From Trichoplax adhaerens (Eukaryota > Animalia > Placozoa), in contig NW_002060953.1 of assembly GCF_000150275.1 (NCBI RefSeq), positions 903,693 through 967,692 of the forward strand: a DNA stretch of 64,000 nt. The letters run 5' to 3'. The position numbers were made by a program, and so were the translations under genes. Below, piece by piece: positions 20,799-64,000 of the stretch (within the stretch, counting starts at the first letter, position 1; each line of letters opens with the position of its first letter). Under the pieces are notes generated by a model. That model was not told where the DNA came from, searched no databases, and worked only from the letters and a program-made list of their open reading frames with translations.

Positions 20799-21081
20799 TT
20801 ACAAGCTTCTCTTCCATTCGGCTATTTTTCTTCGACTTGGTCAGCTATAGCATTGATTTTCATCTTACGTAAAGCTGCAACTACTACGGAAATATCAGCA
20901 TCTTGCCCGACGTTATTTTTCCACAATATCAGAACTTTGTACACTTTATTGTAACGGTTATGCTCTCTACTTGAAATATCTTCAATTTCTACTTGTGGCG
21001 AATGAAACGAGATTCACAAACGAAATAAATTGTCTATATTGAGTCGGTTTGCTATTATATCGAAGCACCTTATATCCATTC
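20799..21081 (-). pseudogene. Orphan death-domain terminal exon (type A) with premature stop
   Basis: MDIRCFDIIANRLNIDNLFRL*...REHNRYNKVYKVLILWKNNVGQDADISVVVAALRKMKINAIADQVEEK is homologous to 50102-50379 and 33504-33787. The flanking intron and 3' sequence are homologous too. Confidence 0.85.
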
Positions 21082-22884
21082 TTGTATTAAAAATAAAATT
21101 GAAAACATGAACTAGTCTTCAAGTCGTCAAGGTTGCATCTGATCTAGCACGCACGTTTAGCAATAATATTGGGCAATTTTTTTCGTAACTACTGCAATTT
21201 TAAAACCTATGATATGTTATAAAATATAAACTACTACAAATACTGCTTCTTAGGATTTTTAATCGTCACTTTTGCGTTGAATCAATTTGAGCATTATGAA
21301 TTCTTATAGAAAGTCTGCTAGATAATCAATCTTAGAACTAATTAAAATCTGAATTAACTCATAAAAAATTGCCTATTATGAACGTATTTTACTGGTAGTT
21401 AGCTAACCTTATAAAGTTTATTGAATAAACAATCCTAAAATAAATTATGGTCGTAAATTTAATTCATAAATAATTGTTTAGTCAGTAAATTAGTTTACTG
21501 GTAGCTAGAATATTCTAAATACGGATCCTCAAATTCGTTGATGATATCATTAGCTAACAAAACTGTACGCGATCATATCATCAGTGACAAAAATAACTGA
21601 AAGCGTTACTTCAATTTAAGTCTAGTTGAGTGCCTCATTACAATTTGCTAACTTTTGCCTTAATTTCACTCATAACGTGTTACAATTTTAAAGTATACTG
21701 TATTCATATTATCTACTCTTATAAAATTTAATTTATATCATCAGTATAACTATAAGTCCGGGTATCAAAAAAATACTCAAAGCTTATCCCATAATCTCTC
21801 TAGTTAACGTTATGATTAAGGCCCCGAAATAGTTTCATGGCTAATGAACAGCAATCATCATTATGATTCTTTTCTAAACAGATTTGAAACTTTATATCGA
21901 CTGTAAGCTATACTGTAGTTCCATTTAACAGCACTATAACAATGAATGCAAAGTCTTACTCATTTAATTTTCATTTTATGGCGGAGCCTAGTTACGTAAT
22001 AGTGTCCTGAAGTTTTTAATTACCATGTAACACCTTGACATATAACAATTTAAATTTTCGTGCATGCCGCTTTGGTCAACTTAAATGAGATTGCTAGTGA
22101 GCGTACTTAAAACATGAATTCAGATTAAGTTTGTGATCTAATTAGGAGCGATAAAACTAGATATGATGTTAAGTACTACAGAGGTGTGATATATACCAAT
22201 CACGAAATTCCAAATTTTAGAAAAATAAGGGCTTTTATTGAATCTTATACAAAGATTAACTACACAGCTCTACTCTAGCCGAATACTACTTCTAAAGACT
22301 TCTTGAACGAACTAACAGGATAATCTAAAGTTGCATGCTTTTATACTTTCCGTAGCATTCGCAGCTACAATCCGCATGGCAACCTTTTACCTTATTTTAC
22401 ACATAGTTAAATTATTCTTAGTAAGACTATTCTACTGCGGACCATCATTAATCCAATATGGATACGACTACAGTACTTACGTAGACATTATTCACACCAG
22501 CCAAAGTACAATGAATTAACCATATCCTAATATATGATTTACAGTTCTATTTTTACCTATAGCCATATTAGTAACTCAACAGCTTACTGTATATAGTCAT
22601 CTGTACTCTAGCATAGAGTCTCTACCACTACAGTCTATAGTTACAGCTACCAAATATCTCTTAGGATAAATATCTACCGTACATTATACTACACATGGTT
22701 AACAGTCTACAATCACAATACTAAGTTACATTACAAGAGGCTATGGTTGCAGATTGAAAACATGATTACAGATCTGTACTGATTATTAAATATTAAGTGA
22801 GCAAAAGAAATGCGCGATTAATAAAAGTGTAGTAACAGTCTAATCCGATACGTATATAATAAATTAAATGATTTCGATGATAAA

Positions 22885-23565
22885 ATGTTACCGCACAACG
22901 TATTTTCTAATCAAATTTGAAAGCTGGATTTAGTCTTGACTGCTACTTTTGCAATTACTGCTGTTATTTTGCTGCCACTAATTGAACAAGTGGATAAGAT
23001 TCAACACATAATTTTATTTTACCTGTAGTGTAATAGGAAAGTATATTCGAGCTATTAATCATAAGTAGTAAAAGCAGTGACAAGTTGTTACAAGTCTAGC
23101 CAATAAATTCATGACTTATAGTAACCTGGAGAGACATGATGCATTCTTAATTTACGTTCAGGTTGACAATGCTTAGGCCGAAGCCAAGTTATTACTTTTA
23201 TTGAGCCAAGATAGAAGCACAACAAACGCTCTATTAATAAAAGTGCTATACTAATCTAATTCAATACCTGTATAATAGAGTACGCGTAGGTATTTCGATA
23301 AAACTACCGTATAGCGTATCCTAATCAAATTTGAAAGCAGGTTTTAGCCTTGTCTGCTAACGTTGCTAATGAGCCAACAAGTGGGTAATAATACAAGCAA
23401 TATTATTGCCAACAAATAATACTATTGTTCCTTTAGCTTAAGGGGAAAGTATTTTCAGATTATAAACTATAAGATGTAGACGTAATCCCAAGTCATCAGA
23501 AGTCCAATGAAAAAAATCAAGGCGTTATGATATCCTGGAGATACATGATGCATTCCTAATCCAAT
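22885..23565. repeat. Degenerate two-copy tandem duplication, period ~410 bp
   Basis: 'ctaatcaaatttgaaagc.gg.tttag.cttg.ctgcta' occurs at ~22907 and ~23321. 'cctggaga.acatgatgcattc.taat' occurs at ~23125 and ~23534. Confidence 0.75.
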
Positions 23566-24603: not shown

Positions 24604-26733
24604 CTAGAAATTTTGTTCGTTGTTCTTTGACAGAATGATGTCATTCCTACCAATAGTTTGCAAAGCCCGCTGCAATCGGCTAATGCTAACATTGGGATGT
24701 GCCTTTTTGTACCAGTAATTGAGCAATTCCATTGCCTGGTTAAAGACATGGTCGCGATTTTGTTCCATTATAACCTTAACACAAATCGTTGGATCTAGGA
24801 TGGCCGCTAACTGTGGCCAGTCTGTGCCAATAGAGCTTGCAATAGGGTGAAAATACTTCCTAGGATCTATATAGTACAAGTAGAAACTTTACTATGAAGT
24901 ACTATACGAGTATGTTGTAACAATTTCAATTGCAAATAAATTACTTGATTTTACATGATATAAAGTACAATATTTACATAATGAGCTCTTATGTCGCAAT
25001 TAGAGTTGAATAATCATCTGGTTCGCTATAATTATTTATGTAATGGTAATAATGGCATTAGCGATAGCACAGGTGGAACTGTACTTCTATTGTAAGACTA
25101 ATAGAAATAAATGGCTCTAATTCGAATTTGAATAACTCTGTAAACGAACTACTTACTGGACAAACAATGTACAAATAAATTAAGATTGAATATTTTTTAA
25201 TTCATAAATCATTATTTATTATGTTCAGTAGCTTACTAGTAGCTAGAATATTCTAATGACGATCTTAAAAATTCGTCAGTGATATCATTATCTAGTAAAA
25301 CTGTATGCGATCATATCATCAGTGGCAAACGTAGCTTAAAGAATTACATCCATTGACGAGGTAAGGTATTCCTATGTTAGAATTTACACGGAGTAATTGC
25401 TCTTAAGCATATTTGAATCGATCTACAATTGGATTACTAAATGCAATTGAGAATGATTGATAGATATCAATTCAATAGAGGTTTACCTTTATCTTTGGTA
25501 TCTTTCCTTTGGTCTAAAGTAGTGGAATAAAAATAGCCACAATCGATTAGTAGTTGTATCGTTTAAGTAATCAATACAGTAAATTAGTGCCCATAATGTT
25601 TGATAATAATCAACTATTGTTTACGCTATTACAAAATCACCTTGTATTAAATAGTAAAATAGCTATGATAGAGTACATTTATGCCTCTTTGCTTGCTCTA
25701 GCGTATGACTTTAGTTTATTATATCATGAAAAGTGATAATATAAGAATGAAGCTGCTGTTTATTCTCACATGCTTACCTATCCAGAAATTTTCATTATAA
25801 ATCATCCAATCGTTCAAAGATTGACTGGCAAATTCCATCTTACAATGCTTACATTGAATCCAATTTTGATCTCCTTCCTTGTATTCTTCGGTTATACTTG
25901 TTGGTGTATTATATTCACTACATTTGACGAAATATCGACAAGCAGCCCCTTTAAACTTGACCATCCTTTCATTGACAGTGGAGATGAGTTTGTTCTTGAC
26001 AATTTCGTGTGGCCGTTTGACAAATATAGAATTTGTAACTTTATCGATAATCGATTGACTAGAGCCCAATATCATGATGACTGTGACCAAGAAGTAATAA
26101 TCGAATCTTGAGTGGCTTGTTATATGTAGAAAGAGCCAAATTATACTCGCCTCGTTTCTCATAGACAACTCCAATATTGTTATATAACATCGGGATGATT
26201 GTGACCAAGAACTAATAATCCAACTTTAAGGGATTTGTCATACTTAGAAAGCGCCTTTGTAGACTTGCCCTGATGACTGTAGATGCGCCCAATCTGCGGA
26301 TAACTATCAGCAAGGCGTGGATCATTTTTAATGGAAACATTTTAATTTCAAGTTCAGCTATTTATAACAGCCTTCCAGTGTTTCTTTCCAATCCCATTAC
26401 CATCCCTTAATCTTACTTTGTCTGTCTAACTATTCAGCCATTTTCACTTTATCTTGCAGTTAAGTAGGCAGAGATGTCCCTTTTCTTTCCATTCTTTGCT
26501 TTCTTCCGTTCTTTTTGTAAAATATAAATATCGCACATATCAAGACATATATCGCATCGAAGTCGATTAATCTTGACACAAGGATTGCAAAACACTTGAA
26601 TCTCATCTAGAGCTTGCGTAGAATAAGATAATCCTTGGGTTCAATTGTAGGTAGTCTTGTACTTTTCACCATTTTCATACAATGATTGTATATGAGGAGG
26701 AATTATAGAGTGGATGGATTTATTATCGGCCAT
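24604..26733 (-). pseudogene. Internally deleted/chimeric TPR-ROCO gene: decayed TPRs joined to the COR C-terminus, micro-exon and death domain (type B)
   Basis: From 26733, MADNKSIHSIIPPHIQSLYENG... continues with stops and frameshifts. At ~26060 the TPR sequence joins directly to SQSIIDKVTNS..., so Roc is absent. Donor after 25778; 27-nt exon 25513-25487 (DQRKDTKDK); death-domain exon 24866-24604 (DPRKYFHPIASSIGTDWPQLAAIL...ALQTIGRNDI). Confidence 0.85.
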
Positions 26734-28599
26734 CTTTTCTTTGACTATTTTTAGAAAGAATCGATCAATGGAAAATGTTGAGTCGATTTGATAACTTCAA
26801 TTTAAAAAAACGACAAGTTAGTGCCAATTCGAATAAAGTCTTGTTGCAATAATCGATTACGGTACTTGTCAGCGAATTGATATTATGCTTATGTAATTAA
26901 TGGAATAGTAGGGCGATGCCGGGTACAAATTTATATGCATACGATTCGTATTCCAACACAGAAATACAAACAATTCGGTTATTTAAAAGGTTGAACAATA
27001 ATTCAAGATGCTCCTACAAACTCATATATAAATGTAACTAGAAATTTATCTTGAAAATGCAACCATCCATGTTGCAAAGACCGAGGCTGGACTGTCACTG
27101 AATAATGAAATCTAATTGTACAGTAGATGATAACTTTAGACACAGCGCTAGTGAAGAATCTTTTGCATCAATTTATGAAAAATTAATGTTAATGACATTT
27201 ATAATTGAATAAGATTCTTAAGATAGCATGTACAGTAAGATGGCTTTTGTCCACGTCTTTTGGAAACCTTCAATTTCTATTTTTAGTTCAAAAGTAAGGA
27301 ATAATGTGATAGAAATTCAAGCAAATGTCAAACTTACCAATTTAATTTTTTCATTACTGGCTAATGATAGTTTGATGTTATTTTGGGGCCGAAATGTAGG
27401 TATAATTCTATCAATTGCACTGTATGCTGCTTATTCTAACGATGAGCAAAGTCAGCAAATAGAACCAAATAGAATTGAAGATGGCATACGAGTAAACTTC
27501 TACCCACTAAAAATCCTATTACATTAGGCAAAAAATGTTCCCTACAACGTAGCCAGTTCAAAGGTAATCGATTTTCAACCTTCAATATGCGCGTACAAAT
27601 ATAATGGTAATGAAATGATATTCTGCCATGTGCATGTTGTTGGATATGTCCAAATTCATGATTCTTCAAGGTGCCATTTTCAGCCCAAGTGTCCTATGAG
27701 ATACTATTGAAACTATGCAGCAATGGCTGTGCCAGGCTTGTACGGGTTCAGAGCAAATGTCATTTCTTCGCTTGCCTTCAAGGCTTCGTTGTGGTTAAAG
27801 TTGGGCAATTGGTTATTTTGTTGACCGTAGTTTGTTATTTCAGGGCGCAGCAGGCACGACTGTTGACCGATGGCCCATAATCTACAGCATTAACTTTACT
27901 TCATCATCCAGTTCAAAAACTTTATATACTGTACTCTACTCGATACAAGTAGCAAGAACTACTAAATTTGAAGAGAGAGGACATATCATAATGTCCAACA
28001 AAATGGTCAATATGATACTGTTAAAGGCGTAGTCAATATTTGCCATTGAAATCATCCTTTATTAAAAGCATTTTATTGAGTAACAACACCGCACTCAATA
28101 GTGTTAGGTAGGGCATACCAAGTAACCAAATATAATCATCACTTCTTTGGATTGTGTAGCCATTTTTTGATCGTCATTGTAGACAACTTTATAGACGAGC
28201 AGATTTCCAATTGTAAAGTATTTGCTGACACAGCTCTAAACTAGCTATCCAATCAAGTCACCATCAGTCAGTCATATTGGTCATTAACGAATTTACAAGA
28301 GAACTGATTCTATGTTGCATAAGAATGCATTTCACAACTTTCATCAAGGTACATTTCTACATGCAGTGAGGAATCCTTTCAACTGGTAGATGGCCATAGC
28401 CATTTTCAACGATTTACTATTAGATGGTCATTAACATTGAATTCACTGCTGTTTATATACCAAAGACACAAAGTTTGCAATCTACTTTGAAAAACCAATG
28501 GATAAAATAGTCATAGAGTTATCGGTGATGGTGGCATGATTTAGTACGGCGATTTAGTCATCAGACTCCTTCCACATCGATGATGATTGCACCAACACG

Positions 28600-50101: not shown

Positions 50102-53100
50102 TTAGCAATTTTCGACCATTTTTTCTTCGACTTGGTTAGCTATAGTATTGATTTTCATCTTACGTAAAGCTGCAATAACTACAGAGATATCTGCATTTTG
50201 ACCAGCGCTATTTTTCCACAATATTAGAACTTTATACACCTTATCGTAGCGACTATGTTCCCGATTTAATTTAATTTCATCAATTTCTATGCTGGATAAA
50301 TGCAGCAAGACTCCTAAACGAAATAAATCATTTATATGGAGTTGCTTAGCTATGATGTCGAAGTACACAGTATCCATTTCTATATTGAAATAAAATTTAA
50401 AATATTAGTCACACTTCAAGTCTTCAGGGTTGTATCTGATCTGTGATGTAAAGCTAATACTAATCTTGAGCAATTCTTTTTCAGAACAACTGTAATTTTA
50501 ATACTACTTATGCAGGGTTTATCAAAATAAAACTGGAACTAATACTACTTGCTAGTATAGTCTTTTTAATAATCAATATTGGGTTAATTCAATTTTATTA
50601 TTATCATGAATTCTTACAAAAGTTTGTCCAAAAAATTCTTAAAGTAAATTAAATCAAAGAAATTATTCATGGTTGACTGACTATTTTACAGAGTAGATCA
50701 CTAATAGTTTGAATATTTTACTTGCAATTCTCTAAAATTAGTTTGTGTTATCGTTAACTAGCAGAACTTTATGCAATGATGTCAAAGACTAGATGAAAGA
50801 GTTTTATTTACTTAAGGTAGAATTCTTATAGAGAATATGCTCTCAATATTACTTCAATAATTCCAAAATTAATCACTGTAAACAATTTTGAAAGAATTAA
50901 ATGATAATAATTTAGTAGAAGCTTACCATTATCTTTTACATCTTTCCATCGCTCTAAACAAGTAAAATAAAACAAGAACAATCGATTAATAGTTTTGTAG
51001 TTGCTTTGATAGAAAGAGATTGTAAAATCATAAACATGTCAATGAAATGTATCACGTATATTTAGAAATAATTTATAAAAAGCTCTCTCTCTTTCTCTGC
51101 AGGTACCTATACATGCAGATATGCTATAGTAAGTTTTATATCCTGTACAAAGCTGAGGAATGAATTGGCTGTCATTTAATTTTAAACGGTGTTCTCATTT
51201 ACTAACATAGAAGAATATAATATGCTCCAAAGTAATGATGGATAAAATCTAGCCATTAGTATTTAACACATAAATGAATACAGCAGGATTAAGTTCTCAC
51301 CTCGAAATAGTACAAAATTATAATACGTTTTTAGTCACATGAAATATACATAAATTAGAAAATTTTTATAATTAATCCAGTGCAGCACACAAAGCGATAA
51401 TTAAGGTAATCTTCTAAATTACCTACATGATAGCATACATTTCCTTTGCTTTAATTACTTCAGCACATAATTCTGCTTATTTATATCAATGTTTTTATAT
51501 ATAAATAAGATAATCAAAAATAGAGTCATGATAATCACGATGTAAAAATAAATGTGCTAATTATTAAGAACACAGTAAAAGGAATGCGTAATGGAAGAGC
51601 TCTTGCTTATAGTACATTGCAATCGTAATAATGATAATAAAAAGAATATAAAAGCTATAAATTGTGTTCACATCCTTACCTATCCATAATTTTTCATTAT
51701 AAATCATCCAGTCGAGAAGAGATTGACTAGAAAACTGCATACTGCAATATTCACATCGAATCCAATTTATATCTTTTTCGTTATATTTATCGGCGATACT
51801 TGTCTCTTCACCACATTCACTACATTTAATGTAAAATCGACAACAAGCTCCTTTAAGCCTTACCATCCTACCATCCACAATCGAGATTAGTTTATTCTTA
51901 ACAATATCTTGTGGTCTGTTATGAAATATAGAATTCTTAACTTTGTCAATAACCGATTTGCCGATTTGTGGATGATTTATTTTCTGATAGCAATATTGTA
52001 AAGCGATGTGAGATTTCTCTTTCTTAACTATAAGATAGTAATCATCATCTACTAAATAATATTTGGCACATTGATAGTATAATTGTACTTTTGTGTTATT
52101 CCACTCTTTTAAACAAGAGGATAACAGACAATAATAAATTCCATCAGGAAGATATGGAAGATCGATATGTGCGTATCCAATGTACAGCCAATCTGATACA
52201 TGATATTTTGATAAATCAAATGGCTTTACATCATAATGCAACAGGTATGGAACAAAATATTGGCAATCCTCTCCATTATTACCCTTTTCATTTCTAACAG
52301 AGCAAAGAATATCATAAGCTTCCATCACTTTTAATATGGTTTCTTTACTAGTTTCATCTAAATTAAATTTTTTAATAGCATAATCGATGTATATTCTTGA
52401 TAATTTTCCTGTTTGGCTGGCTATCTCATATTCACGTTTTATCTGTAGACTTCCTTCTTGACGATCTTGTAATTGAATAACTGAACGAAATATATTTAAT
52501 AACCAATCGACGTTAGTTATAATAATTCCGTTATCGCCTACTTTATCACAGTATATTACTTCTCCTAAATCATGCAGATATATTAGCATTGCTTTTAATT
52601 CGTCATCACTTTCATATAATCCACATTCCTGAGACAAAGTTACTATTTGTTGCATTGTCATAATATCATGTACTCGAGAAGCTCGAATTTGATTCATAAC
52701 AACCGAGATCGCATGATTATGATGGTAACGGATAGATTTGTTTAATATTGTAGCCATAATGTACCATCGAATAGGAATAGGATTACGAATAAATGGCAAT
52801 GATTGTACAAATGTCTTGATAATATAATGCAAGCGAAGGCAACATTGTCGACGCTGTTCTTGTGTCGATGGACTAATATCATCAGGTTCGCAATCAAAAA
52901 TAATGCCAGAAGAGTAGATATTATTCTTATAGGAAGGCATAGATAGTAATAATGTTTTAACGAATTGATTAAATCGAGTTTGTCGATCTTCTTCGCTTGC
53001 AATACAATCACCATGAGAAGCTACTAGAATAATAATAGGCAATGAATATTCAGTATCTTCGTCATTGATGTTTACACTGATTGTACTTTGGCTTGTATGA

Positions 53101-54952
53101 CTAGCTACGATTGATGTAAGCCATTCTTGCATAGCCTGTAAATAGGTCATATTCAGTGATTCGTTCTCTCTCGTTCTTACTTTATCATTAATATCTTGAT
53201 TAATATTGAACACAAGAATATAAATACTGTTAGCAGAGATAAATGGATAATAGGTAACATGATAAATAGCATGGCCACCAAAATCCCATATTTTAACATA
53301 TTGATTAAAATTATTATCACGCCTATCAATATTTTGATTGATAATAGACGAACAGTAGTATTGATGTAAGCTAAGCTTAGACTCTGATTCGATTTCAATT
53401 TCTTTGGATGGTATGGCTGTTTCTTCTGTATGAAATTGATTTGCAGAAGCATCGTCTTCTTGTAAATTTTGTTCAGATAGATTATCTGGTATAACAAGTT
53501 GATCAATCCCATCTATGTTGACTATTTGCTGATTGATAGTAGCTTGACTATCGATGCTTGTTTCGGCTAGCTCTTGTATCACTGTTTTCACATTATCGTC
53601 TAATATCTCAGTCCAATCATAAATCTCTAAATTATGAATACAGTATGATTCAGTCTCCACCATAATATCAGAATTCTCAGCCACTTGTGTCGGAGATTGA
53701 TTGTTGACTAATACTTGTTGAGTAAATACTTTTCTAATGGAAGATTTACCCACATTGCGTGGGCCAATAAACATGCCTCGTATTAAGTTATTATAGCAAT
53801 GACCTTGATTTAATGCCTTGTTATATGCATTGTAATATATTTTTTTTTGTAAATCTGTAGATATAAAATATAGAATATTGTTATGCTAAGACATTTTTTA
53901 TCCTGATCTATCCTACTACTATATTGAAACTCGATTATAAATTTACCTTCATCTTGGACGTGTTGAAAAATATCAAGATTAGGATTCTTGCCGGTGCCAT
54001 TATTGCTTGCTGTCGTCGCAGCGTTGTTAGTTTGATTTGGCGTAAATAGTTTAGCGATACTATCGACAAATTTTTTCGTCATTGATGTAGACTGATTATA
54101 CTGTATTTGCTGCTTGTGACGAGTCCTAGTAATATTATTTCTTGTTCTTCTAACATTAGGATGATTCTCACCGAAGACTGGTAGGGCAATATAAAGTGAT
54201 TTATTGTACATAGAAAGGGCCTCATCGTACTTGCCTTGCAAATCATAAATAACTCCAATGTTGTTATATATTAGCGCAACATCTGGATGATGGTAGCCAA
54301 GGACTGATAATCGAATCTGGAGCGACTTGTCATGAACAGAAAGAGCCAAATCATACTTGCCTTGCTTCTTATAGACAATTCCTATGCCGTGATATGAGTC
54401 AGCAACATGGAGATGATTATGACCAAGGACTAATAATCGAATTTGGAGCGATTTATCATGCATGGAAAGAGCCACATCGCACATGTTCTGACCACAGTAG
54501 ATACGCCCAAGTTGATGATAACTATCAGCAAGACGAACATCATTTTCGTCTAGGCATTTTAATTTCATTTCCAATGCTTTTGTGCAGTCTTCTAGTGCTC
54601 CATTGAAATTCCATAGCCTTATTTTAATCTCGCTTTGTCTATATAAACATTCAGCTATTCTCACTTCATCTTGCAGTCCATTAGCCAGAGATAGTCCTTT
54701 TTTCTTCCATTCATTAGCTTTCTTCCATTTATATTGGAAAGTGTAAATGTCACATATATCGAGATAAATATCGCACCGAAGGCGATGAATGCCAATACTA
54801 GGATTTGGTAATGATTCAATTTCATCTATAGCTTGTGTATAACAGGATAGTCCTTCCGCCAAATTGTAGGCAATCTTACATTTTTGACCCTTTTCATATA
54901 GAGACCGTACATGATGAAGAACCATAGAATGATCAGATTGATCATCGGTCAT
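50102..54952 (-). CDS. TPR-Roc-COR-zinc ribbon-death domain protein (ROCO family), copy D, ~1161 aa, intact
   Basis: Exons 54952-53947, 53854-51680, 50953-50927 and 50379-50102 total 3486 nt in frame, with all introns phase 1 and GT-AG. G1 GPRNVGKS, SPTQ, WDFGGH, ASHGD; COR YLHDLGEVIY...VDWLLNIFR and YFVPYLL; CSEC..CEYC; type-A death domain. Confidence 0.92.
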
Positions 54953-56609
54953 ATTTTCCTTTTCAAAATTTAATAACAGTTAGTGAATGAAAGTGTGGCG
55001 CTGATTCGATAATATCAAAATATCGAAACGATGTTAGTCCTTGATACCAACGATAAGTTAAGACAAATAAAATTCAAATTTAAGGTTTCTTGCAATGATC
55101 GATTACTTATAAGCAAATGGATGTTATGTTTATGCTGTTAGTCGTATGCTTTGTTGGTACAACTCTACTTGCATACGTGTCGTTTTCAAACACAGGAATA
55201 AAACGATTACTGAGAAAATTTAATAATAAATAAACCTTCTCCTAACATTTCATCTATGAATGCTAATAAAAATATTATTCTTCAATCTATAAACGATAGT
55301 AGATTCTAGCTTAAGATATGGCGCTAGCGAAGAACCGTTTACATCAATTAATATCAAATTAGGCCAAAATAGATGACTAATTTTATTTTACAAATACACT
55401 CCGACTAACACAAATACTATACCAATAGCGATGATAAGTATTAAACCTTTATATTTTATTTAACTAGATAACAGCAAGTTAATGCTAACGCCAATAATAA
55501 TTAGCAAAAAAATTGTATGTATTGTAAGAAGGCTTTCGCTCACGTTATTTGGACTGATATCTTCAGTTGAAATGCAACTTATAATGTCATAAACATCAAA
55601 GACAGATGGATCATTTACCAATTTATGGATTAGTTATTGGCTAATAAGGAATCGATGGTTTGTCGAGATGTAGGTCTACTGCGATCGATTTGGCTTTACG
55701 CCATCAATTCCAAAGAGTACGAAAGAGCCAACGAGTTAGTAGTGTGTTTTATTGATTTAAGCCTCAAATAAAAATAATATTGTGCATGAATGTAGGTTGC
55801 TCCATGTAGTATCATAGTATTGTTGCAGCAAAAGACGATCGAAGGAAAAACATGGTTACTATAGTAACTACACCAATAATTTAGGGTTTGTAACATATGT
55901 TAATAGAAGTAGCTTTGAAGAGGCATTTCAGAAGGTTATGGATACTCGCTTACAGTTAAGGATGACCTCGCCCAAATTATACATACGTATGCCAGTATAA
56001 AGGAAATTAGATAACTGTTTGGATTATACTACACGCAGTACTATTTTTGTAGGTTTTCTGTACTAGATTGCTGCATGCTGCTAGCTATCCTTATGATAAA
56101 TATTGACAATATGGAAAGAAATCTCTATCAGATCATGCAGACATACAAATATGAATGTAGTCTATTTTAATATCCATAATTGATAGTATCCGATCAATTT
56201 AATCTACTGTTGCTCAAAGAACTGTTTCATGAATTAAGTAAAGATTTTGCTAGTAAGAAATATTTTCATTTTACACTAATTCAGCAAATGCAATGACATC
56301 AACATAACATAAATGCATCATAACGCGATATTGGCCCTCGGCTGACCAATGCTAATTGTATAAAATTACATGCACTTATCATCATATCCAATCACGAAGC
56401 AAAAAATGTTTACTAAAGGCATGATTTATCCATAGATTATTTGAATTCCCGAGTATACGCATACAGTCCAAACGAGATGATGCTCTTACGGGCAAGTAGA
56501 TCAATATTTAAAAGCTCTTGTATTATCACGACGTGATTTTTGACACAAGTGTGGTATGGGATCATGTAGAAACTATGCAGTAACTGCCATTTTATAGATG
56601 TAAAATGCT
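54707..56609. repeat. ~2-kb near-identical duplication, copy 1 (5' end and upstream region of ROCO copy D)
   Basis: Matches 57323-59340 apart from scattered substitutions and one 115-bp indel. Confidence 0.95.
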
Positions 56610-57322
56610 ACTTTAGGAATATCATTTAAAATTAAAAATGGTTGATTTATCACAGCATACCCTTGCATTCCGGAGTAGTAATTATTAGTCAGTAGTGTTC
56701 GTCATTTCTTGATACAGAAAAGTTCTGGGACTATTATAGTTGAATTACCGTAATAAATTAATATTATGAGTGTACATTTTAAAAGTCTATTTTTACCTTT
56801 TGGCCTACTTACAGAAGCGGAAAATTATCCCATTAGTTGCTGAGTATCTTATAACGTTAAATGAAAAGCTCTTTATGTAAAGCCAATAATAATTAAGTTA
56901 ATAGCTACATTTTATTTATAATACTGTTAGCGATAACGATAGCGTCTGATTTTTGGTATGCTCTCAGTCAACTGAAGCGTGATCGGCAGCTAAGCTTCCA
57001 CGTGAATATCTACCTTTATTCTGATTTCTTACCACCTTATATACAATACAACCGATATGAATACAATACAAGAAATCATATAATTAGATACAGAGACGCT
57101 AGTAAATCCGTAATTAATACCGATAAAATTTTGCTTAATTTAATTTCAGTTGGCAAACACTGTTCCACGCTATCGCAAATCTAAATTTGCCACAGTAAAA
57201 AGTAGAACGGAAAACCAAAATTACGATTCTACTGTCAGGTTTGTCCTCCCTGACAGTAAATTTGCAGTTTGANNNNNNNNNNNNNNNNNNNNNNNNNNNN
57301 NNNNNNNNNNNNNNNNNNNNNN

Positions 57323-57568
57323 CCATTCATTAGCTTTCTTCCATTTATATTGGAAAGTGTAAATGTCACATATATCGAGATAAATATCGCACCGAAGGCG
57401 ATGAATGCCGATACTAGGATTTGGTAATGATTCAATTTCATCTATAGCTTGTGTATAACAGGATAGTCCTTCCGCCAAATTGTAGGCAATCTTACATTTT
57501 TGACCCTTTTCATATAGAGACCGTACATGATGAAGAACCATAGAATGATCAGATTGATCATCGGTCAT
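57323..57568 (-). CDS. 5' fragment identical in protein to ROCO copy D (MTDDQSDHSMVL...KKANEW), cut by an assembly gap
   Basis: The first ~82 aa match the 54952 ORF. Sequence beyond the gap is not TPR-coding, so this may be an allelic or assembly duplicate. Confidence 0.6.
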
Positions 57569-59340
57569 ATTTTCCTTTTCAAAATTTAATAACAGTTAGT
57601 GAATGAAAGTGTGGCGCTGATTCGATAATATCAAAATATCGAAACGATGTTAGTCCTTGATACCAACGATAAGTTAAGACAAATAAAATTCAAATTTAAG
57701 GTTTCTTGCAATGATCGATTACTTATAAGCAAATTGATGTTATGTTTATGCTGTTAGTCGTATGCTTTGTTGGTACAACTCTACTTGCATACGTGTCGTT
57801 TTCAAACACAGGAATAAAACGATTACTGAGAAAATTTAATAATAAATAAACCTTCTCCTAACATTTCATCTATGAATGCTAATAAAAATATTATTCTTCA
57901 ATCTATAAACGATAGTAGATTCTAGCTTAAGATATGGCGCTAGCGAAGAACCGTTTACATCAATTAATATCAAATTAGGCCAAAATAGATGACTAATTTT
58001 ATTTTACAAATACACTCCGACTAACACAAATACTATACCAATAGCGATGATAAGTATTAAACCTTTATATTTTATTTAACTAGATAACAGCAAGTTAATG
58101 CTAACGCCAATAATAATTAGCAAAAAAATTGTATGTATTGTAAGAAGGCTTTCGCTCACGTTATTTGGACTGATATCTTCAGTTGAAATGCAACTTATAA
58201 TGTCCTAAACATCAAAGACAGATGGATCATTTACCAATTTATGGATTAGTTATTGGCTAATAAGGAATCGATGGTTTGTCGAGATGTAGGTCTACTGCGA
58301 TCGATTTGGCTTTACGCCATCAATTCCAAAGATGGGCAAAAATGAACAAAAGAGAATTAGAAATGAATACACCTCTACCCGACTAACTTTATCTAGCTGT
58401 ATATGAATACACTCACTTAAGTAGTACTTAGCAAGTAGTACTATAAAGTACGAAAGAGCCAACGAGTTAGTAGTGTGTTTTATTGATTTAAGCCTCAAAT
58501 AAAAATAATATTGTGCATGAATGTAGGTTGCTCCATGTAGTATCATAGTATTGTTGCAGCAAAAGACGATCGAAGGAAAAACATGGTTACTATAGTAACT
58601 ACACCAATAATTTAGGGTTTGTAACATATGTTAATAGAAGTAGCTTTGAAGAGGCATTTCAGAAGGTTATGGATACTCGCTTACAGTTAAGGATGACCTC
58701 GCCCAAATTATACGTACGTATGCCAGTATAAAGGAAATTAGATAACTGTTTGGATTATACTACACGCAGTACTATTTTTGTAGGTTTTCTGTACTAGATT
58801 GCTGCATGCTGCTAGCTATCCTTATGATAAATATTGACAATATGGAAAGAAATCTCTATCAGATCATGTAGACATACAAATATGAATGTAGTCTATTTTA
58901 ATATCCATAATTGATAGTATCCGATCAATTTAATCTACTGTTGCTCAAAGAACTGTTTCATGAATTAAGTAAAGATTTTGCTAGTAAGAAATATTTTCAT
59001 TTTACACTAAGTCAGCAAATGCAATGACATCAATATAACATAAATGCATCATAACGCGATATTGGCCCTCGGCTGACCAATGCTAATTGTATAAAATTAC
59101 ATGCACTTATCATCATATCAAATCACGAAGCAAAAAATGTTTACTAAAGGCATGATTTATCCATAGATGATTTGAATTCCCGAGTATACGCATACAGTCC
59201 AAATGAGATGATGCTCTTATGGGCAAGTAGATCAATATTTAAAAGCTCTTGTATTATCACGACGTGATTTTTGGCACAAGTGTGGTATGGGATCATGTAG
59301 AAACTATGCAGTAACTGCCATTTTATAGATGTAAAATGCT
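57323..59340. repeat. ~2-kb near-identical duplication, copy 2
   Basis: Matches 54707-56609 and carries an extra 58333-58447. The two copies diverge abruptly after 'gatgtaaaatgct'. Confidence 0.95.
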
Positions 59341-60603: not shown

Positions 60604-61468
60604 CATCTGATAATGCTGAATCATCTTTAGTGGGTAGAACAGGCAGCTTTTCTGAATCAGACCGCTTTGATGGGTTGGGCTGCCAAACATGACAAACTTT
60701 ACTTAGTAAATTAAACAGAGTCTATATACTTCACAACTTGAAGATTGATTATAGATGTTGTTCATTTACCTTGTTGGAATTTGATCTCAACAAGAAGCAA
60801 ATCTTTGCCTTGGTGTCTCGCTTCGGGTCTTCAAGCTTTAGAGAGATTTGAGCTATATTAGTAGCTGCTTTTTTGATAACCTTGCAAGCGTAATCGATAG
60901 CATGATAGCTATACTCATTCCAATTGATAGTAATTATCCGATTATTTAAATCAGCATTCGGACAATCTAAACCGTCTTCCTTAAATTTAGCTTCGTAATC
61001 ACCATTTTCTAGAATAGTATTTTCAAGTCCAGTCGTAACTAAACGTATCCTAATAACTTCCTGATGAAAATCTGACAAGATAGCAGTTTCATCTTCATCT
61101 TTTTTAGCTAAGATTAATTTCATATGGACAGTATCATCACTTGTGTCTATTTCGGATAGGAAAGCTAACGTTTTAATTCGTTGCTGCCAAGATGGAAAGA
61201 TATACTTGTAGGCTGAATAAAAGGAAGGTTTGACGCTGGAAATGACGGCATAGTCAGAGAAATGGCTTACCGCAAAAGTAAGGCAATAATATCCATTTTT
61301 ATCGCGGCTATATTCATACTCTACATCTTGCTGTTCCCACTTCTCACATCCGTAGCTTCGACAAATGATCTTTATTGGGATATTAAAGTTGTTGTTTTTC
61401 TTAAGTGANACTATCTGGTTGATATATGGAACGGGGACTTGAAGTAAAGCTTTCCTTGTGCTATTAGG
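60604..61468 (-). CDS. ZU5-UPA protein fragment (PIDD1/UNC5CL-like) with HFS motif; both ends lie in gaps
   Basis: Open frame ALLQVPVP...IKIICRS...WEQ...TFAVSHFSDYAVI resembles the C-terminal part of ZU5 and is followed by a ~140-aa beta-rich UPA-like segment. Donor after 60770; 76-nt exon 60679-60604 ends in phase 1. Confidence 0.7.
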
Positions 61469-61670
61469 NNNNNNNNNNNNNNNNNNNNNNNNNNNNNNNN
61501 NNNNNNNNNNNNNNNNNNNNNNNNNNNNNNNNNNNNNNNNNNNNNNNNNNNNNNNNNNNNNNNNNNNNNNNNNNNNNNNNNNNNNNNNNNNNNNNNNNNN
61601 NNNNNNNNNNNNNNNNNNNNNNNNNNNNNNNNNNNNNNNNNNNNNNNNNNNNNNNNNNNNNNNNNNNNNN

Positions 61671-62678
61671 TCCTCATATTCCAGATGGAATTTATTATTG
61701 TTTACTGTCGTCGTGCTTAAGAGAATGGAATAATACAAAGGTAGAAATATGTTATCAATGCGCTAAATTTTATCTGAAAGAAGATCACTACTACCTTATC
61801 GTTAAAAAAGAGCAATCGTACATAGGCTTACGATATTGTTATCAAAAAATGGCCGACGCTAAAACTGACCAAATGTTTAAGAGCAAAATCAGAGACTGTA
61901 TACGCGAAAAGCATCCTCACGATATTGTACTGAAGAAATTGTCGTCTATAGTTGCTAAAAGAATGCCCAAGTTTTACAATGCGACATGTTATTTTCACGT
62001 TCGATGTCCAGAATGTCATAAGTTAACTAAAACAACGAGTAAATGTAATCTAGAAGGTAATAAGATGACTGAATGTGAACATTGTAAAGAATTATTTTCA
62101 AGTCAATCTGCAAAGGATTGGAAAATTGATGAGGAGGAGCCAGAAATATGTAAGTTATACCTGAAATTTGATTTGCTAGTGTAATTCTAATTGGATCTTA
62201 ACTAGAATAGCGATCATTATACAATTCACAGTACAATATATTAGTATCTTTTATCAAAGTAATATCGATGTTGAGATATAGTACATGATTATTTTACAAA
62301 TTATTAATGCAGAAGTATCAATTTTCAAGTAATTCAATTTTATATCACTAATTAATTACATCTATTTTCAAATTAGCCGTTTCGAAAGAAGTAGATCCTA
62401 AAGAAGTAGATATCAGGTATCAATTCTTTTGTATTGCAAATTTAATCGAAACGGACTGGAAAAAGTTAGCAGCTATATTAGATCCGACAATTAGTACTGA
62501 AGTTATCCAAAAACAAAATCGAAACGATGTATTTGGCCAAGCGATAGAACTACTAAATAAATGGTACAATAAATATCCAAATGTTGGTATTTGTCGTCTA
62601 GAAGGCGCTTTGAGACGCATAGGAAGAAGCGATATTGTTACTCGTATTAATCAAATTAATCAAGAATTAAATATATAA
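61671..62678 (+). CDS. 3' part of a ROCO paralog (COR C-terminus, zinc ribbon, type-B death domain), copy E, opposite orientation
   Basis: PHIPDGIYYCLLSSCLREWNNTKVEICYQCAKFYL...RCPECHK...ECEHCK runs to a donor after 62149. Phase-1 exon 62377-62678 reads FFCIANLIETDWKKLAAILDPTI...ALRRIGRSDIV. The contig is bounded by gaps. Confidence 0.88.
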
Positions 62679-62818
62679 ATATAAATTTTGTAATAATTTT
62701 ACCATTATTTGCTTCTAAAACGAGCTAAATAGTGAAAAATGCATAAAAATTAACTAGGATATCAGAGNNNNNNNNNNNNNNNNNNNNNNNNNNNNNNNNN
62801 NNNNNNNNNNNNNNNNNC

Positions 62819-63868
62819 TTAGACACATACATGATCTTCAGCTACAGAGCGCAGCCCGNCTTTTAAAGAGTGCTTCAACTAATGCTCTCTTTGTGTAACT
62901 CCGACCTTTCCTACTCGCATACATACTCAACATTTGCGCACATTGATCGTCAACTGATCCATTATTTTCAGCTATAATTTTGTCGATGTCGCGTTGATCA
63001 ATTCCAAATTCTCTTGCCAAAGTTTTCCGCTCCGTTCCAATATCTTTTGCGATTTTGCTGTTATACTCCTTGGCAGCTACAATAATTTTATTTTATTTGC
63101 AAAAATAGGATCAGCGGCTACTTACGGTACATCATATGAAACAGTTAATAGAAAATTGAATGTAGCAAGAATGAACGATTCTCTCTACACTAAATCAAGA
63201 ATATTCCTCTTTCTAAGTTGCAATTGTTGAAAGCGCTTGCTATACAAACCAATTAAATGACTCCATCTTACAAATCAGGTAAGTCGCTGCTATTGTAGTA
63301 TGCGATAGATTTTACTGTATTGTCACTTAAAATAGTAAAAAAATGTTAGCCACAGTACAACTTACAAGAATTGGGTTCGTCCATTTCTATCTCAACAGTT
63401 TTATTAGAATCGACAGAGACTTCAAATCGAATTCCGGGTGCACAACTAGCATTGAGTTTCTCAGTTTCGTCTGATTCTTGTTCTAGAGTTGAATCGACAT
63501 TACAAAGATACAGTATCATCAGCCATTAAAGAAACAAAGTATAATCTCATTCGCTACTATGCATGCAAGCGCTCAACATTTTTATAAAGTATTATAACAT
63601 CGTTAAACGTTAAAAGTACGTACTCTTTTGGCTTAAATGATTGTAATATAGTGTGATTTACTTAACTCAATGTTGTTATACTAACTGCAAGCTATTCTCT
63701 TTAAAAATACAGAGTGTGAGAACTTATTGAAAAATATACTTTAATTCAAAGAAGACTATTACAAAACACATTTTACTGAACAGAATTTGGCTTTTTACGC
63801 TTTGGTAGTACTTGTGTGATATCAATTCAGTGGAGGCTCACCTTTATCTTCTCTATATATCTTTTTCT
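62819..63868 (-). CDS. 3' exons of a further death-domain gene (type-C, FADD-like DD) starting beyond the window
   Basis: A 27-nt micro-exon 63868-63842 (EKKIYREDK) corresponds in size and phase to the ROCO micro-exons. It is followed by a 117-nt exon 63482-63366 and a DD exon 63076-62819 (KIAKDIGTERKTLAREFGIDQRDIDKI...ALVEALFK). The frame closes if the single n at 62859 is spurious. Confidence 0.7.
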
Positions 63869-64000
63869 CTAAAGAAATGAGGTGAAAATAGGAATAATCA
63901 ATTAGTAGCCCTATCGTAATTATTTTAAAATAGATGATAGATTTGCAGCCATGCAAGTGAAATATATGACATGTTTCTCTAAAGAGTTTACGAAGATAGT

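What the first reader, a model, noticed from the sequence alone, without database searches (positions are those of the whole stretch)
20799..63868. NLR-like receptor cluster built on a Roc-COR GTPase: TPR sensor - Roc-COR - zinc ribbon - death domain
Seen: a tandem family with the same exon plan (TPR exon, Roc-COR exon, micro-exon, DD exon; introns phase 1). About ten copies or remnants occur across the window, in states from intact to decayed. Established: NLR/STAND immune receptors use a repeat sensor + NTPase switch + death-fold effector layout and evolve by birth and death; Roc-COR is a dimerising GTPase module (LRRK2, DAPK1, MFHAS1). Inference: these kinase-less ROCOs are intracellular pattern or allorecognition receptors in which ligand-driven Roc-COR dimerisation clusters death domains. 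ROCO expansions in placozoans are known in outline, so any novelty lies in the mechanism and diversification rather than the family itself.
Basis: partly seen in the sequence, partly recalled or inferred. Interest (0 to 1): 0.9.

Follow-up and report, generated by a model that had tools for sequence, protein, structure and literature searches.

The report
Placozoan TPR-Roco-death-domain gene cluster
This stretch of the Trichoplax adhaerens genome holds a real tandem cluster of kinase-less Roco GTPase genes (TPR repeats, Roc-COR, zinc ribbon, death domain); the family was already known in outline, and its role as an immune receptor is plausible but untested.

Summary
Pfam finds TPR_12/TPR_10, Roc, COR-A and Death on minus-strand exons. 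An AlphaFold model of the big exon matches LRRK1, LRRK2 and bacterial Roco structures. A CxxC..CxxC zinc ribbon ends the Roc-COR exon and is conserved in 30 relatives.

The window is T. adhaerens. It holds three full-length copies:
- C is intact, and its spliced form appears in contigs of two runs.
- A has open frames but is cut by three gaps.
- B is frameshifted and degenerate.

A fourth copy, E, straddles the window's end. Six to seven fragments complete the cluster.

For C, the spliced contigs show the plan TPR exon, Roc-COR exon, 27-nt micro-exon, DD exon, with all introns GT..AG and phase 1.

The gaps matter. A's 3' end, the 57.3-kb 'copy' and the plus-strand fragment cannot be judged across them.

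Genome-wide I count at least 33 long open Roc-COR exons. About half have a Death exon downstream. The published count was 'at least 17' (Civiero 2014).

TPR variation concentrates on the concave-face positions 2, 5, 9, 12 and 13, which fits a binding surface under diversification.

The 'NLR-like' reading is an analogy, because these proteins are not STAND ATPases. The same logic was already proposed for brown-algal and bacterial Roc-COR proteins. No test here shows an immune function or ligand-driven dimerisation. This is a new member of a known kind, of moderate interest.

The parts
53947..54958 (-). Copy C, exon with the start codon (ATG at 54952) and the TPR region. It has three full 42-aa KLC/NPHP3-type units plus an N-terminal helical part.
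   Evidence: Pfam TPR_12 E 1.4e-51. Donor joint at 53947 seen in contigs of runs X4 and X6. 98.5% identical to H2 protein P0026.
55619..55756 (-). Copy C, 5' non-coding exon. Its upstream end is not defined. It is spliced to 54958/54959 over a 660-nt CT..AC intron.
   Evidence: A loose end of 137 letters behind 54959 matches 55620 onward. Dinucleotides checked.
51680..53854 (-). Copy C, Roc-COR-zinc-ribbon exon: 725 residues, phase 1 at both ends. P-loop GPRNVGKS at 53742-53765, G3 motif DFGG, G4-like SHGD. An insert of about 110 residues lies between G1 and G3.
   Evidence: Pfam Roc 2.8e-9 and COR-A 6.4e-11. Joints. Model pLDDT 79.5, pTM 0.81. Foldseek top hits are LRRK1, LRRK2, C. tepidum Roco and M. 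barkeri Roco2, E 5e-16 to 2e-9. Motif conservation.
51726..51842 (-). Copy C, C4 zinc-ribbon-like module at the end of the Roc-COR exon (residues about 672-710; CSEC ... CEYC).
   Evidence: C678 and C681 are invariant; C701 and C704 are kept in at least 90% of 30 sequences. Four strands in the model. Copy E gives a sub-threshold Zn_ribbon_CSL hit, E 0.006.
50927..50953 (-). Copy C, 27-nt micro-exon, phase 1-1, encoding (E)RWKDVKDN. It is a linker and holds no cysteines.
   Evidence: Both joints seen in contigs of X4, and one also in X6. Homologous micro-exons with AG/GT flanks occur in B, R2, L013, L018 and L019.
50102..50379 (-). Copy C, death-domain exon (type 1) with its stop codon. The acceptor is at 50379, so the whole DD is encoded. 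The H2 gene model P0004 uses a later acceptor and truncates helix 1.
   Evidence: Pfam Death 1.1e-10. Joint 50379|50927. The closest solved sequence is the FADD DD, E 1.5e-6.
37439..39179 (-). Copy A, TPR exon. Eight near-identical 126-nt (42-aa) units lie at 37653-38701.
   Evidence: Pfam TPR_12 2e-137. TRF gives period 126, 8.3 copies, 91% matches. Donor and phase. Face-position variability.
35375..37358 (-). Copy A, Roc-COR exon. It is interrupted by gap 36104-36153 (about 63 residues of COR-A missing) and cut by gap 35325-35374 inside the second CxxC.
   Evidence: tblastn. Pfam Roc 5.2e-10. Tail sequence. 98% identical to H2 protein P0018 over 242 residues.
33507..33824 (-). DD exon (type 1) downstream of copy A. 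Its linkage to A is not established.
   Evidence: Pfam Death 1.9e-11. The H2 protein nearest to A's COR carries a different DD: 96% identical to C1375:204606-204872 but only 48% to this one.
34052..34258 (-). Second, partial DD-like open frame that abuts gap 33881-34051.
   Evidence: Pfam Death E 0.0015, 19.1 bits, below the cut-off. tblastn.
47111..48629 (-). Copy B, TPR exon (part of gene model TRIADDRAFT_59496).
   Evidence: 100% identical to P0028 residues 1-506. Pfam TPR_12 3.9e-59. Donor and phase.
44777..47009 (-). Copy B, Roc-COR exon with a frame change near 46160-46170. The Roc frame runs 46120-47009 and the COR frame 44777-46174. The G3 motif reads DFSD (glycine lost). On the tree B has a long branch.
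   Evidence: tblastn frames. Alignment. Roc 25.8 bits is below the cut-off; COR-A 2.2e-13. End branch 0.53, against about 0.01-0.02 for its closest relatives.
44129..44155 (-). Copy B, 27-nt micro-exon (RWIDVRDD).
43480..43755 (-). Copy B, DD exon (type 2).
   Evidence: Pfam Death 2.2e-7. The closest solved sequence is the ankyrin DD, E 3e-4.
24607..26796 (-). Remnant R2. It has a TPR part with many stops (26062-26796) and a COR-B/zinc-ribbon tail (25722-26060) that is 98% identical in DNA to copy A's tail, with one Cys changed to Tyr. It also has a micro-exon at 25487-25513 and an open type-2 DD at 24607-24888.
20825..21118 (-). Remnant R1: a lone type-1 DD exon with an in-frame stop.
   Evidence: Genome search gives Death at E 1.7e-4.
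57323..59340 (-). R3: a 99-99.7% duplicate of 54707-56609, which covers copy C's first 91 codons, its 5' exon and its upstream region. R3 starts at gap 57273-57322. It is either a very recent duplication or an assembly artefact.
61672..62675 (+). R4, on the plus strand: a COR-B/zinc-ribbon tail (61672-62181) and a type-2 DD (62352-62675), with no micro-exon. It begins exactly at gap 61469-61670. Its H2 ortholog P0013 (97%) has a full Roc-COR.
62862..63092 (-). Third-type DD open frame between R4 and copy E. Which gene it belongs to is unknown.
   Evidence: Pfam Death 6.2e-9. Genome search.
63843..63911 (-). Copy E, small exon of 23 codons. The rest of E lies beyond the window, in window-equivalent coordinates: Roc-COR at 64552-66780 and TPR at 66720-67991, both in locus L001.
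   Evidence: 96% identical to the tail of H2 protein P0003. Roc-COR 99.9% and TPR 96% identical to P0003. Pfam on L001. tblastn.
7195..7859 (-). Remnant R0, outside the finding's range: an internal Roc/COR-A fragment with in-frame stops.

Best explanation
SHOWN. The region is a tandem, partly decayed cluster of kinase-less Roco genes of Trichoplax adhaerens. Each full gene encodes, from N to C terminus:
- a helical N-terminal part and a variable number of 42-residue TPR units;
- one Roc G domain, split by an insert of about 110 residues;
- COR-A and COR-B;
- a conserved four-cysteine ribbon;
- a 9-residue linker, present in one subfamily and encoded by its own 27-nt exon;
- a death domain.
The domains sit on phase-1 exons. 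At least one copy (C) is transcribed and spliced.

INFERRED. These proteins work as cytosolic sensor-switch-adaptor proteins.
- The concave face of the TPR array binds a ligand, most likely a protein or peptide.
- Binding changes the nucleotide state or conformation of the Roc-COR module. In other Roco proteins this module couples GTP/GDP to dimer contacts through COR-B.
- That change frees the C-terminal death domain to recruit other death-domain proteins.
The most likely setting is cell-death or innate-defence signalling. The logic is analogous to NLRs, but the NTPase is unrelated.
For: - Domain calls.
- Roc-COR fold: model pTM 0.81, with top matches to LRRK1, LRRK2, CtRoco and MbRoco2. The profile also hits CtRoco at E 2e-19.
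- Conservation across 30 relatives down to 21% identity: G1 (G31, G36, K37), G3 (D191, G194), G4-like D283 and the four ribbon cysteines. This argues for a working nucleotide switch and a structural metal site.
- Spliced contigs for copy C in two runs from different studies; a third run carries the unspliced form.
- Family size: 49 COR-A matches. 33 loci have an open Roc-COR frame of at least 560 aa. 16 of them have a Death exon within 4 kb downstream.
- Lineage-specific clades on the tree.
- Pseudogenes and fragments inside the cluster.
- TPR unit number varies from 3 to 8 full units. Among 42 pooled units, the four most variable positions are TPR 12, 2, 13 and 9. At the pre-chosen face positions (2, 5, 9, 12, 13) uncorrected pN/pS is 1.04-2.3 in 7 of 8 genes, against 0.34-0.99 for the other positions. 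PMC1261162 identifies these as the concave ligand-binding positions.
- The DD subtypes resemble the FADD and ankyrin DDs.
- Precedents for the sensor-Roc-COR-effector logic: PMC8195603 (bacterial AP-GTPase-COR proteins with LRR sensors and variable effectors) and PMC11378527 (brown algae).
Against: - No functional or induction data exist for these genes.
- The immune survey of placozoans (PMC6321704) does not mention them.
- TPR positions 2, 5, 9, 12 and 13 are the most variable in TPRs in general. My pN/pS values are uncorrected, use non-independent repeat pairs, and could partly reflect relaxed constraint.
- H1 and H2 copies are 1:1 orthologs at about 99% identity. No turnover between these strains is seen.
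- The homodimer prediction for COR-ZnR gave no answer.
- A dimer alone would not nucleate a helical death-domain assembly. This rests on established knowledge of the PIDDosome, the Myddosome and Fas-FADD.
- KLC/NPHP3-type TPRs also serve ordinary cargo and scaffold roles.
Confidence: 0.55

Rival explanations
1. The proteins are ordinary intracellular signalling or trafficking scaffolds, comparable to the Roc-COR-DD half of DAPK1 or to LRRK proteins. Their TPRs bind endogenous cargo, and the death domain ties them to housekeeping apoptosis, autophagy or cytoskeletal control. On this reading the expansion reflects cell-type specialisation and not recognition of non-self.
For: - Human DAPK1 has the same Roc-COR-DD order (PMC4104024, PMC4917528).
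- The TPR units are of the kinesin-light-chain/nephrocystin-3 type. Pfam TPR_NPHP3 hits appear, and the H2 annotations read 'Kinesin light chain' and 'Nephrocystin-3'.
- Orthologs in strains H1 and H2 are 1:1 and nearly identical.
- Civiero et al. link the expansion to chemotaxis and phagocytosis.
Against: - Copy number is very high, copies sit in tandem clusters, and there are many dead copies.
- Repeat number changes between copies, and variation concentrates on the TPR binding face with pN/pS above 1.
- Closely related backbones carry different death-domain subtypes.
These patterns are typical of recognition families and unusual for housekeeping scaffolds.
Confidence: 0.3
2. Most of the cluster is non-functional: a neutral pile of segmental duplicates and pseudogenes, with perhaps one or two working genes, so no shared function exists to explain.
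For: - B has a frame change, has lost the G3 glycine and sits on a long branch.
- R0, R1 and the TPR part of R2 carry stops.
- A cannot be shown to be whole.
- pN/pS is near 1 over all of copy A's repeat units.
Against: - C is intact, spliced and about 99% conserved in H2.
- E has open frames and a 99.9% identical Roc-COR in H2.
- 33 long open Roc-COR exons exist genome-wide.
- Structural TPR positions show synonymous differences but no replacements.
- G motifs and ribbon cysteines are conserved down to 21% identity.
Confidence: 0.1
3. Part of the apparent copy number and of the 'states of decay' comes from the gapped draft assembly: allelic contigs placed in tandem, and contigs misjoined at gaps.
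For: - R3 is 99-99.7% identical to C's 5' region and starts at a gap.
- R4 starts at a gap, while its H2 ortholog is complete.
- The block 60325-61468 between two gaps is an unrelated gene on the other strand.
- The sequence beyond gap 35325-35374 is not collinear with the 98% identical R2 tail.
- Contig C1360 gives the same Death score and the same open frame as A's DD.
Against: A, B, C and E differ by 30-50% in protein sequence. R0, R1 and R2 carry their own stops. The core of the cluster is therefore not an assembly artefact.
Confidence: 0.05

Closest known systems
Trichoplax adhaerens ROCO expansion (Civiero et al. 2014, PMC4104024)
   Same: This is the same gene family in the same species. 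[quoted passage not shown] Copy B is the 2008 gene model TRIADDRAFT_59496.
   Different: - I count at least 33 long open Roc-COR exons and 49 COR-A matches.
- The conserved zinc ribbon, the 27-nt micro-exon, the phase-1 exon plan, the G-domain insert and the TPR face variability are not in that paper's text.
- The paper describes TRIADDRAFT_62498 as having a Ras-like domain N-terminal of Roc. That protein has one P-loop and one DxxG, so it has one split G domain.
Human DAPK1 (kinase-ankyrin-Roc-COR-death domain)
   Same: It is the only human Roco with a death domain, and the domain follows Roc-COR as it does here.
   Different: There is no kinase, calmodulin-binding or ankyrin part here; TPR units stand in their place. 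A zinc ribbon follows COR-B. I could not test orthology, because no DAPK1 Roc-COR sequence or structure came up in the searches.
Bacterial and archaeal Roco proteins (C. tepidum Roco, M. barkeri Roco2) and the 'AP-GTPase-COR' conflict systems of Kaur et al. 2021 (PMC8195603)
   Same: These give the best sequence-profile matches (E 2e-19 to 1e-16) and strong fold matches. The layout is the same: a repeat sensor, then Roc-COR, then a variable C-terminal effector or adaptor.
   Different: The sensor there is LRR, here TPR. The effectors there are enzymes or bacterial death-like domains, here a metazoan death domain. The defence role is only predicted there as well.
Brown-algal LRR-ROCO candidate immune receptors (PMC11378527; Zambounis 2012 as cited there)
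   Same: Both are expanded kinase-less Roco families with exon-modular repeat sensors, and both have been proposed as immune receptors.
   Different: The algal proteins use LRRs built from 72-bp exons and have no death domain. Here the TPR array is one exon, and it varies in the number of internal units.
NLR / STAND receptors, including the placozoan NACHT/NB-ARC-TPR/WD40 proteins of PMC6321704
   Same: Both have a repeat sensor, an NTPase switch and a death-fold adaptor. Both occur as multigene clusters with pseudogenes. TPR sensors also occur in placozoan NLRs.
   Different: The NTPase here is a Ras-like TRAFAC GTPase with COR, not a STAND AAA+ ATPase. The order is sensor-switch-adaptor from N to C, the reverse of animal NLRs. 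Wheel-like oligomerisation is not known for Roco proteins.
Roc-COR proteins with TIR or death domains in molluscs, sea anemones and sponges (PMC9334734, PMC5094078; ESM Atlas clusters)
   Same: These are kinase-less or mixed Roc-COR proteins fused to immune adaptor domains. Atlas clusters with Roc + COR-A + Death (Mollusca) and Roc + COR-A + CARD (Porifera) are the nearest by language-model features.
   Different: The atlas hits are leads without alignments. I did not check there for the TPR N-terminus or the zinc ribbon.

Membership tests
ROCO (Roc-COR) proteins | A Ras-like Roc G domain with G1, G3 and G4 motifs | tested here: met
   Pfam Roc is above the cut-off in A, C and E; B scores 25.8 bits against a cut-off of 27. 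The motifs GxxxxGKS, DxxG and SHGD are conserved in 30 relatives. B has lost the G3 glycine.
ROCO (Roc-COR) proteins | A COR domain (COR-A plus COR-B) directly after Roc in the same polypeptide | tested here: met
   Pfam COR-A scores 2e-13 to 6e-11. There is no Pfam COR-B hit. The 725-residue model aligns over about 740 columns to LRRK1, LRRK2 and CtRoco Roc-COR, E 5e-16 to 2e-12.
ROCO (Roc-COR) proteins | Nucleotide-dependent dimerisation through COR-B | tested here: inconclusive
   Complex prediction on residues 330-725, two copies, gave no answer. This needs biochemistry.
NLR / STAND receptors | A central NACHT or NB-ARC STAND ATPase | tested here: not met
   No NACHT, NB-ARC or AAA hit appears on any exon. 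The NTPase is Roc. This is an analogy in layout only.
Death-domain superfamily (Death, PF00531) | A six-helix death domain recognised by the Pfam Death profile above its cut-off | tested here: met
   Seven exons in the window score 31-44 bits against a cut-off of 22.6. Type 1 matches the FADD DD at E 1.5e-6 and type 2 the ankyrin DD at 3e-4. I did not predict the fold.
TPR proteins (TPR_12/TPR_10, KLC/NPHP3 type) | Tandem helix-turn-helix units with the TPR consensus | tested here: met
   TPR_12 scores E 2e-137 to 1e-51. The 42-residue units are listed.
Zinc ribbon | Two CxxC knuckles on short beta hairpins that bind one zinc ion | tested here: inconclusive
   The four cysteines are conserved and the model predicts four strands. 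The only Pfam hit is sub-threshold: Zn_ribbon_CSL, E 0.006. Metal binding cannot be tested with these tools.
DAPK1 orthologs | An N-terminal Ca/calmodulin-regulated kinase and ankyrin repeats before Roc-COR-DD | tested here: not met
   No kinase or ankyrin hit appears on any exon. TPR stands in that place.

The most novel reading that the evidence does not exclude
Placozoans use a large, diversifying family of TPR-Roc-COR-zinc-ribbon-death-domain proteins as true cytosolic innate receptors. This would be a GTPase-based counterpart of NLRs that arose independently. The TPR binding faces would evolve under diversifying selection, and phase-1 exon modules would let death-domain subtypes be swapped between backbones. 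On this reading the Roco module is an ancient immune switch shared with bacterial conflict systems.
Probability: 0.3. Interest if true: 0.75.

Novelty: new member of a known kind. Interest (0 to 1): 0.42.

Why it matters
- Placozoans lack LRR-bearing NLRs, RIG-I-like receptors and cGAS-STING (PMC6321704). How they sense intracellular danger is therefore an open question.
- A family of more than 30 Roco genes with variable TPR faces and death-domain outputs is an overlooked candidate. That immune survey does not mention it.
- If confirmed, it would link the Roc-COR module of LRRK2 and DAPK1 to an ancestral sensing role, and it would tie animal proteins to the predicted bacterial AP-GTPase defence systems.
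- As it stands, the finding mainly refines a known family. It gives a higher count, an exon plan validated by spliced contigs, a conserved zinc ribbon and a single split G domain. It also corrects one H2 gene model.

Tried and rejected
- I first looked for a zinc ribbon in the micro-exon. A regex over the COR-to-DD intervals found no CxxC pair. The micro-exon encodes (E)RWKDVKDN and has no cysteine. The ribbon is at the end of the Roc-COR exon.
- Complex prediction, homodimer of COR-A/COR-B/ribbon (residues 330-725, two copies): verdict 'no answer', score 0.00, and my alignment was not used. This is not evidence either way.
I could fetch no H2 DNA, so I could compute neither between-strain dN/dS nor synteny.
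The N-terminal domains of about half the family were therefore not classified.
- Amino-acid differences between H1 and H2 in TPR versus Roc-COR exons were inconclusive. After removing read-through tails at the splice donors, C has 5 differences in 326 residues and E has 4 in 383. Two pairs, C1381/P0001 and C1375a/P0009, look mosaic; that could be gene conversion or chimeric gene models.
- Pfam found nothing for the ORF at 60752-61408.
- Literature searches for the locus tags returned only Civiero 2014.
All searches were made exon by exon, by reference. In the tree script the pieces of A and B were joined only with X at the breaks.

Full report
ORGANISM AND PLACE. The window is contig C1404:903693-967692 of a 105.6-Mb assembly in 1414 contigs. 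The gene model TRIADDRAFT_59496 of Trichoplax adhaerens (P0028) matches it at 100% over 802 residues. Proteins of Trichoplax sp. H2 match at 97-100%. All full-length genes described here lie on the minus strand.

WHAT IS THERE. Stop-to-stop frames and Pfam show a unit that repeats:
- a large exon with TPR_12/TPR_10 units (E 2e-137 to 1e-51);
- a 2.2-kb exon with Roc and COR-A;
- a small exon with a Death domain.

tblastn with copy C as query maps these units:
- three full-length units: A (33507-39191), B (43480-48659) and C (50102-54958);
- a fourth, E, which has only a 23-codon exon (63843-63911) inside the window. The rest of E lies just beyond the window's end (L001).

The fragments are:
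- R0 (7195-7859; stops; outside the finding);
- R1 (a DD with a stop);
- R2 (a decayed TPR part, a near-pristine COR tail, a micro-exon and an open DD);
- a weak second DD beside A;
- R3 (57323-59340);
- R4 (plus strand; COR tail plus DD);
- a third-type DD at 62862-63092.

'About ten copies or remnants' is therefore right.

EXON PLAN. For copy C, contigs of two runs from different studies (X4, X6) carry three joints, all CT..AC on the plus strand. A third run (X1) has the unspliced form. The joints are:
- 53854|53947;
- 50953|51680;
- 50379|50927.

They define a 92-nt intron between the TPR and Roc-COR exons, a 27-nt micro-exon (50927-50953) and a DD exon that starts at 50379. By arithmetic the coding lengths are 1006, 2175, 27 and 275 nt, so every intron is phase 1 and the total is 1161 codons. 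I did not build or search the joined protein; every search was made exon by exon, by reference.

The H2 model P0004 uses a later acceptor and loses helix 1 of the DD. A further joint shows a 5' non-coding exon near 55619-55756. A and B have the same phase-1 TPR|Roc junction with GT/AG sites. The micro-exon, flanked by AG and GT, recurs in B, in R2 and in paralogs on three other scaffolds. I did not find it in A (gaps), E or R4. R4-type genes join COR to DD directly, as P0016 shows.

ZINC RIBBON AND G DOMAIN. The ribbon is not in the micro-exon, which encodes (E)RWKDVKDN. It is the CxxC-x19-CxxC motif at the end of the Roc-COR exon.

In an alignment of 30 relatives down to 21% identity:
- C678 and C681 are invariant, and C701 and C704 are kept in at least 90%;
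- G31, G36 and K37 (P-loop), D191 and G194 (DxxG) and D283 are likewise conserved.

The AlphaFold model of the 725-residue exon has mean pLDDT 79.5 and pTM 0.81. It shows one G domain with a poorly ordered insert (residues about 81-183) and four short strands at 672-709. Foldseek ranks LRRK1, LRRK2, C. tepidum Roco and M. barkeri Roco2 first, E 5e-16 to 2e-9, over about 740 columns. The sequence profile hits CtRoco at 2e-19.

The insert makes Pfam report 'Ras' on the P-loop part and 'Roc' on the rest. TRIADDRAFT_62498 has been described as carrying a Ras-like domain before Roc (PMC4104024). It has one P-loop and one WDFGG, so it has one split G domain.

THE GAPS.
- 36104-36153 lies in A's COR-A. 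Copy C and the H2 relatives have about 63 residues there, against 17 codons of N.
- 35325-35374 cuts A inside the second CxxC. R2's tail is 98% identical to A up to that point (25849-26060 = 35375-35586), but nothing beyond the gap is collinear with R2.
- The H2 protein closest to A's COR (P0018, 98%) carries a DD that is 96% identical to C1375:204606-204872 and only 48% to the DDs below A. A's linkage to the DD exons at 33507-34258 is therefore not established.
- 33881-34051 separates those two DD-like frames.
- 57273-57322 precedes R3. R3 is a 99-99.7% copy of C's first 91 codons, its 5' exon and its upstream DNA. It is either a very recent duplication or a redundantly assembled allele.
- 59645-60324 and 61469-61670 bracket an unrelated minus-strand ORF. 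R4 begins exactly at the second gap, while its H2 ortholog P0013 is longer.

No reading frame across a gap is evidence of anything.

STATE OF THE COPIES.
- C is intact, spliced and 98.5-100% identical to the H2 proteins.
- E has open TPR and Roc-COR frames and a 99.9% identical Roc-COR in H2. The DD of its H2 ortholog is not found in this assembly.
- A has open frames but is incomplete.
- B has a frame change near 46160-46170, reads DFSD instead of DxxG, and has a long branch. It is probably a pseudogene, although its first half is annotated.

THE FAMILY.
- The genome has 49 COR-A matches, 40 of them above the cut-off, and 118 Death matches.
- 33 COR-A loci sit in open frames of at least 560 aa. 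16 of these have a Death exon within 4 kb downstream on the same strand, and 7 have one upstream.
- Of the 21 loci I could fetch, six have the TPR exon.
- On a tree of 48 Roc-COR sequences, A, B, C and E fall in one well-supported clade of 13. In that clade, all but B, and likewise R4 in its own clade, pair with an H2 sequence on very short branches. Unnamed ENA sequences form their own clade.
- Published work reports 'at least 17' ROCO genes with TPR, LRR, CARD and death domains (PMC4104024).

THE SENSOR.
- Copy A's TPR exon holds eight 126-nt units that are 91% alike.
- Nonsynonymous differences concentrate at TPR positions 2, 5, 9, 12 and 13. There pN is 0.395, against 0.076 elsewhere. Structural positions show only synonymous differences.
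- Across eight genes, the pre-chosen face positions give uncorrected pN/pS of 1.04-2.3 in seven. The other positions give 0.34-0.99.
- Among 42 pooled units, the four most variable positions are 12, 2, 13 and 9.
- Magliery and Regan identify exactly these as the concave, ligand-contacting and generally most variable TPR positions (PMC1261162).
- This fits a binding face that differs between units and paralogs. It is not a rigorous test of positive selection.

THE OUTPUT. Three DD subtypes occur. Type 1 (A-side, C, R1) is nearest to the FADD DD (E 1.5e-6). Type 2 (B, R2, R4) is nearest to the ankyrin DD (3e-4). Closely related backbones carry different subtypes: R2's tail is 98% identical to A's but carries a type-2 DD. 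With symmetric phase-1 exons, this fits exon-level swapping of the adaptor.

MECHANISM.
- Shown: the architecture, conserved nucleotide-binding motifs and ribbon cysteines, a spliced transcript for C, the size and decay pattern of the family, and face-biased TPR variation.
- Inferred from established Roco biology: Roc-COR acts as a nucleotide-dependent conformational and dimerisation switch.
- Inferred from death-fold biology: the DD recruits homotypic partners.
- Speculative: that a ligand on the TPR face drives the switch, and that the context is immunity.

The homodimer prediction gave no answer.

COMPARISON WITH WHAT IS KNOWN. These are true Roco proteins. They are not NLR/STAND proteins and not DAPK1 orthologs. 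The same sensor-switch-effector logic on Roc-COR has been proposed for bacterial AP-GTPase-COR proteins (PMC8195603) and for brown-algal LRR-ROCOs (PMC11378527). Roc-COR fusions to TIR or DD are noted in Aplysia and sea anemones. ESM Atlas features point to Roc-COR-Death clusters in molluscs and Roc-COR-CARD clusters in sponges (a lead only).

VERDICT. The feature is real, was read correctly, and is a new member of a known kind. The functional claim is a reasonable hypothesis with precedents and without direct evidence.

Noticed in passing
window 49145-49174 joined to 51103-51292 (+ strand): One contig of run X6 joins 49174 to 51103 with GT..AG on the plus strand. This is a spliced plus-strand transcript antisense to copy C. 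Its intron contains C's death-domain exon and micro-exon. It is a single contig at low depth.
   Followed up: partly
window 60752-61408 (-), between gaps 59645-60324 and 61469-61670: This open frame has no Pfam match even at E 10. Its nearest ESM Atlas clusters by features are UPA/ZU5 (UNC5/PIDD-like) families, score 0.91. A death-fold platform gene may sit inside the Roco cluster.
   Followed up: partly
window 1-982 and 8387-9366: A direct repeat of 982 bases, 96.7% identical. The first copy ends at gap 983-1032. A Roco fragment like R0 also lies just before the window, at C1404:902543-902806.
   Followed up: no
window 10654-11599 (-): Exons of a trypsin-like serine protease (Pfam Trypsin, E 1e-32), upstream of the cluster.
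   Followed up: no
P0027 = TRIADDRAFT_62498 (another scaffold): The literature describes this protein as having a Ras-like domain N-terminal of Roc. It has a single P-loop (aa 310) and a single WDFGG (aa 413). The 'two GTPase domains' are most simply one Roc domain split by the family's insert.
   Followed up: partly
window 54350, 54412, 54729 (copy C, TPR exon): Contigs of three runs leave the window's sequence at the same three places and run on for 255 or more unlike letters. Those letters are not found in the window or in the 21 fetched loci. They are probably assembly-graph branches into paralogous TPR exons.
   Followed up: partly
G000 contigs C1375 (about 186-212 kb) and C1381 (about 423-445 kb): These paralogous clusters hold genes 90-95% identical to copy A's COR, with matching death-domain exons. 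C1375 carries the DD that the H2 ortholog of copy A has. This points to segmental duplication or gene conversion between scaffolds.
   Followed up: partly
H2 gene model P0004 against window 50290-50420: The H2 annotation joins the micro-exon to a downstream acceptor and drops the first helix of the death domain. The spliced contigs use the acceptor at 50379.
   Followed up: yes
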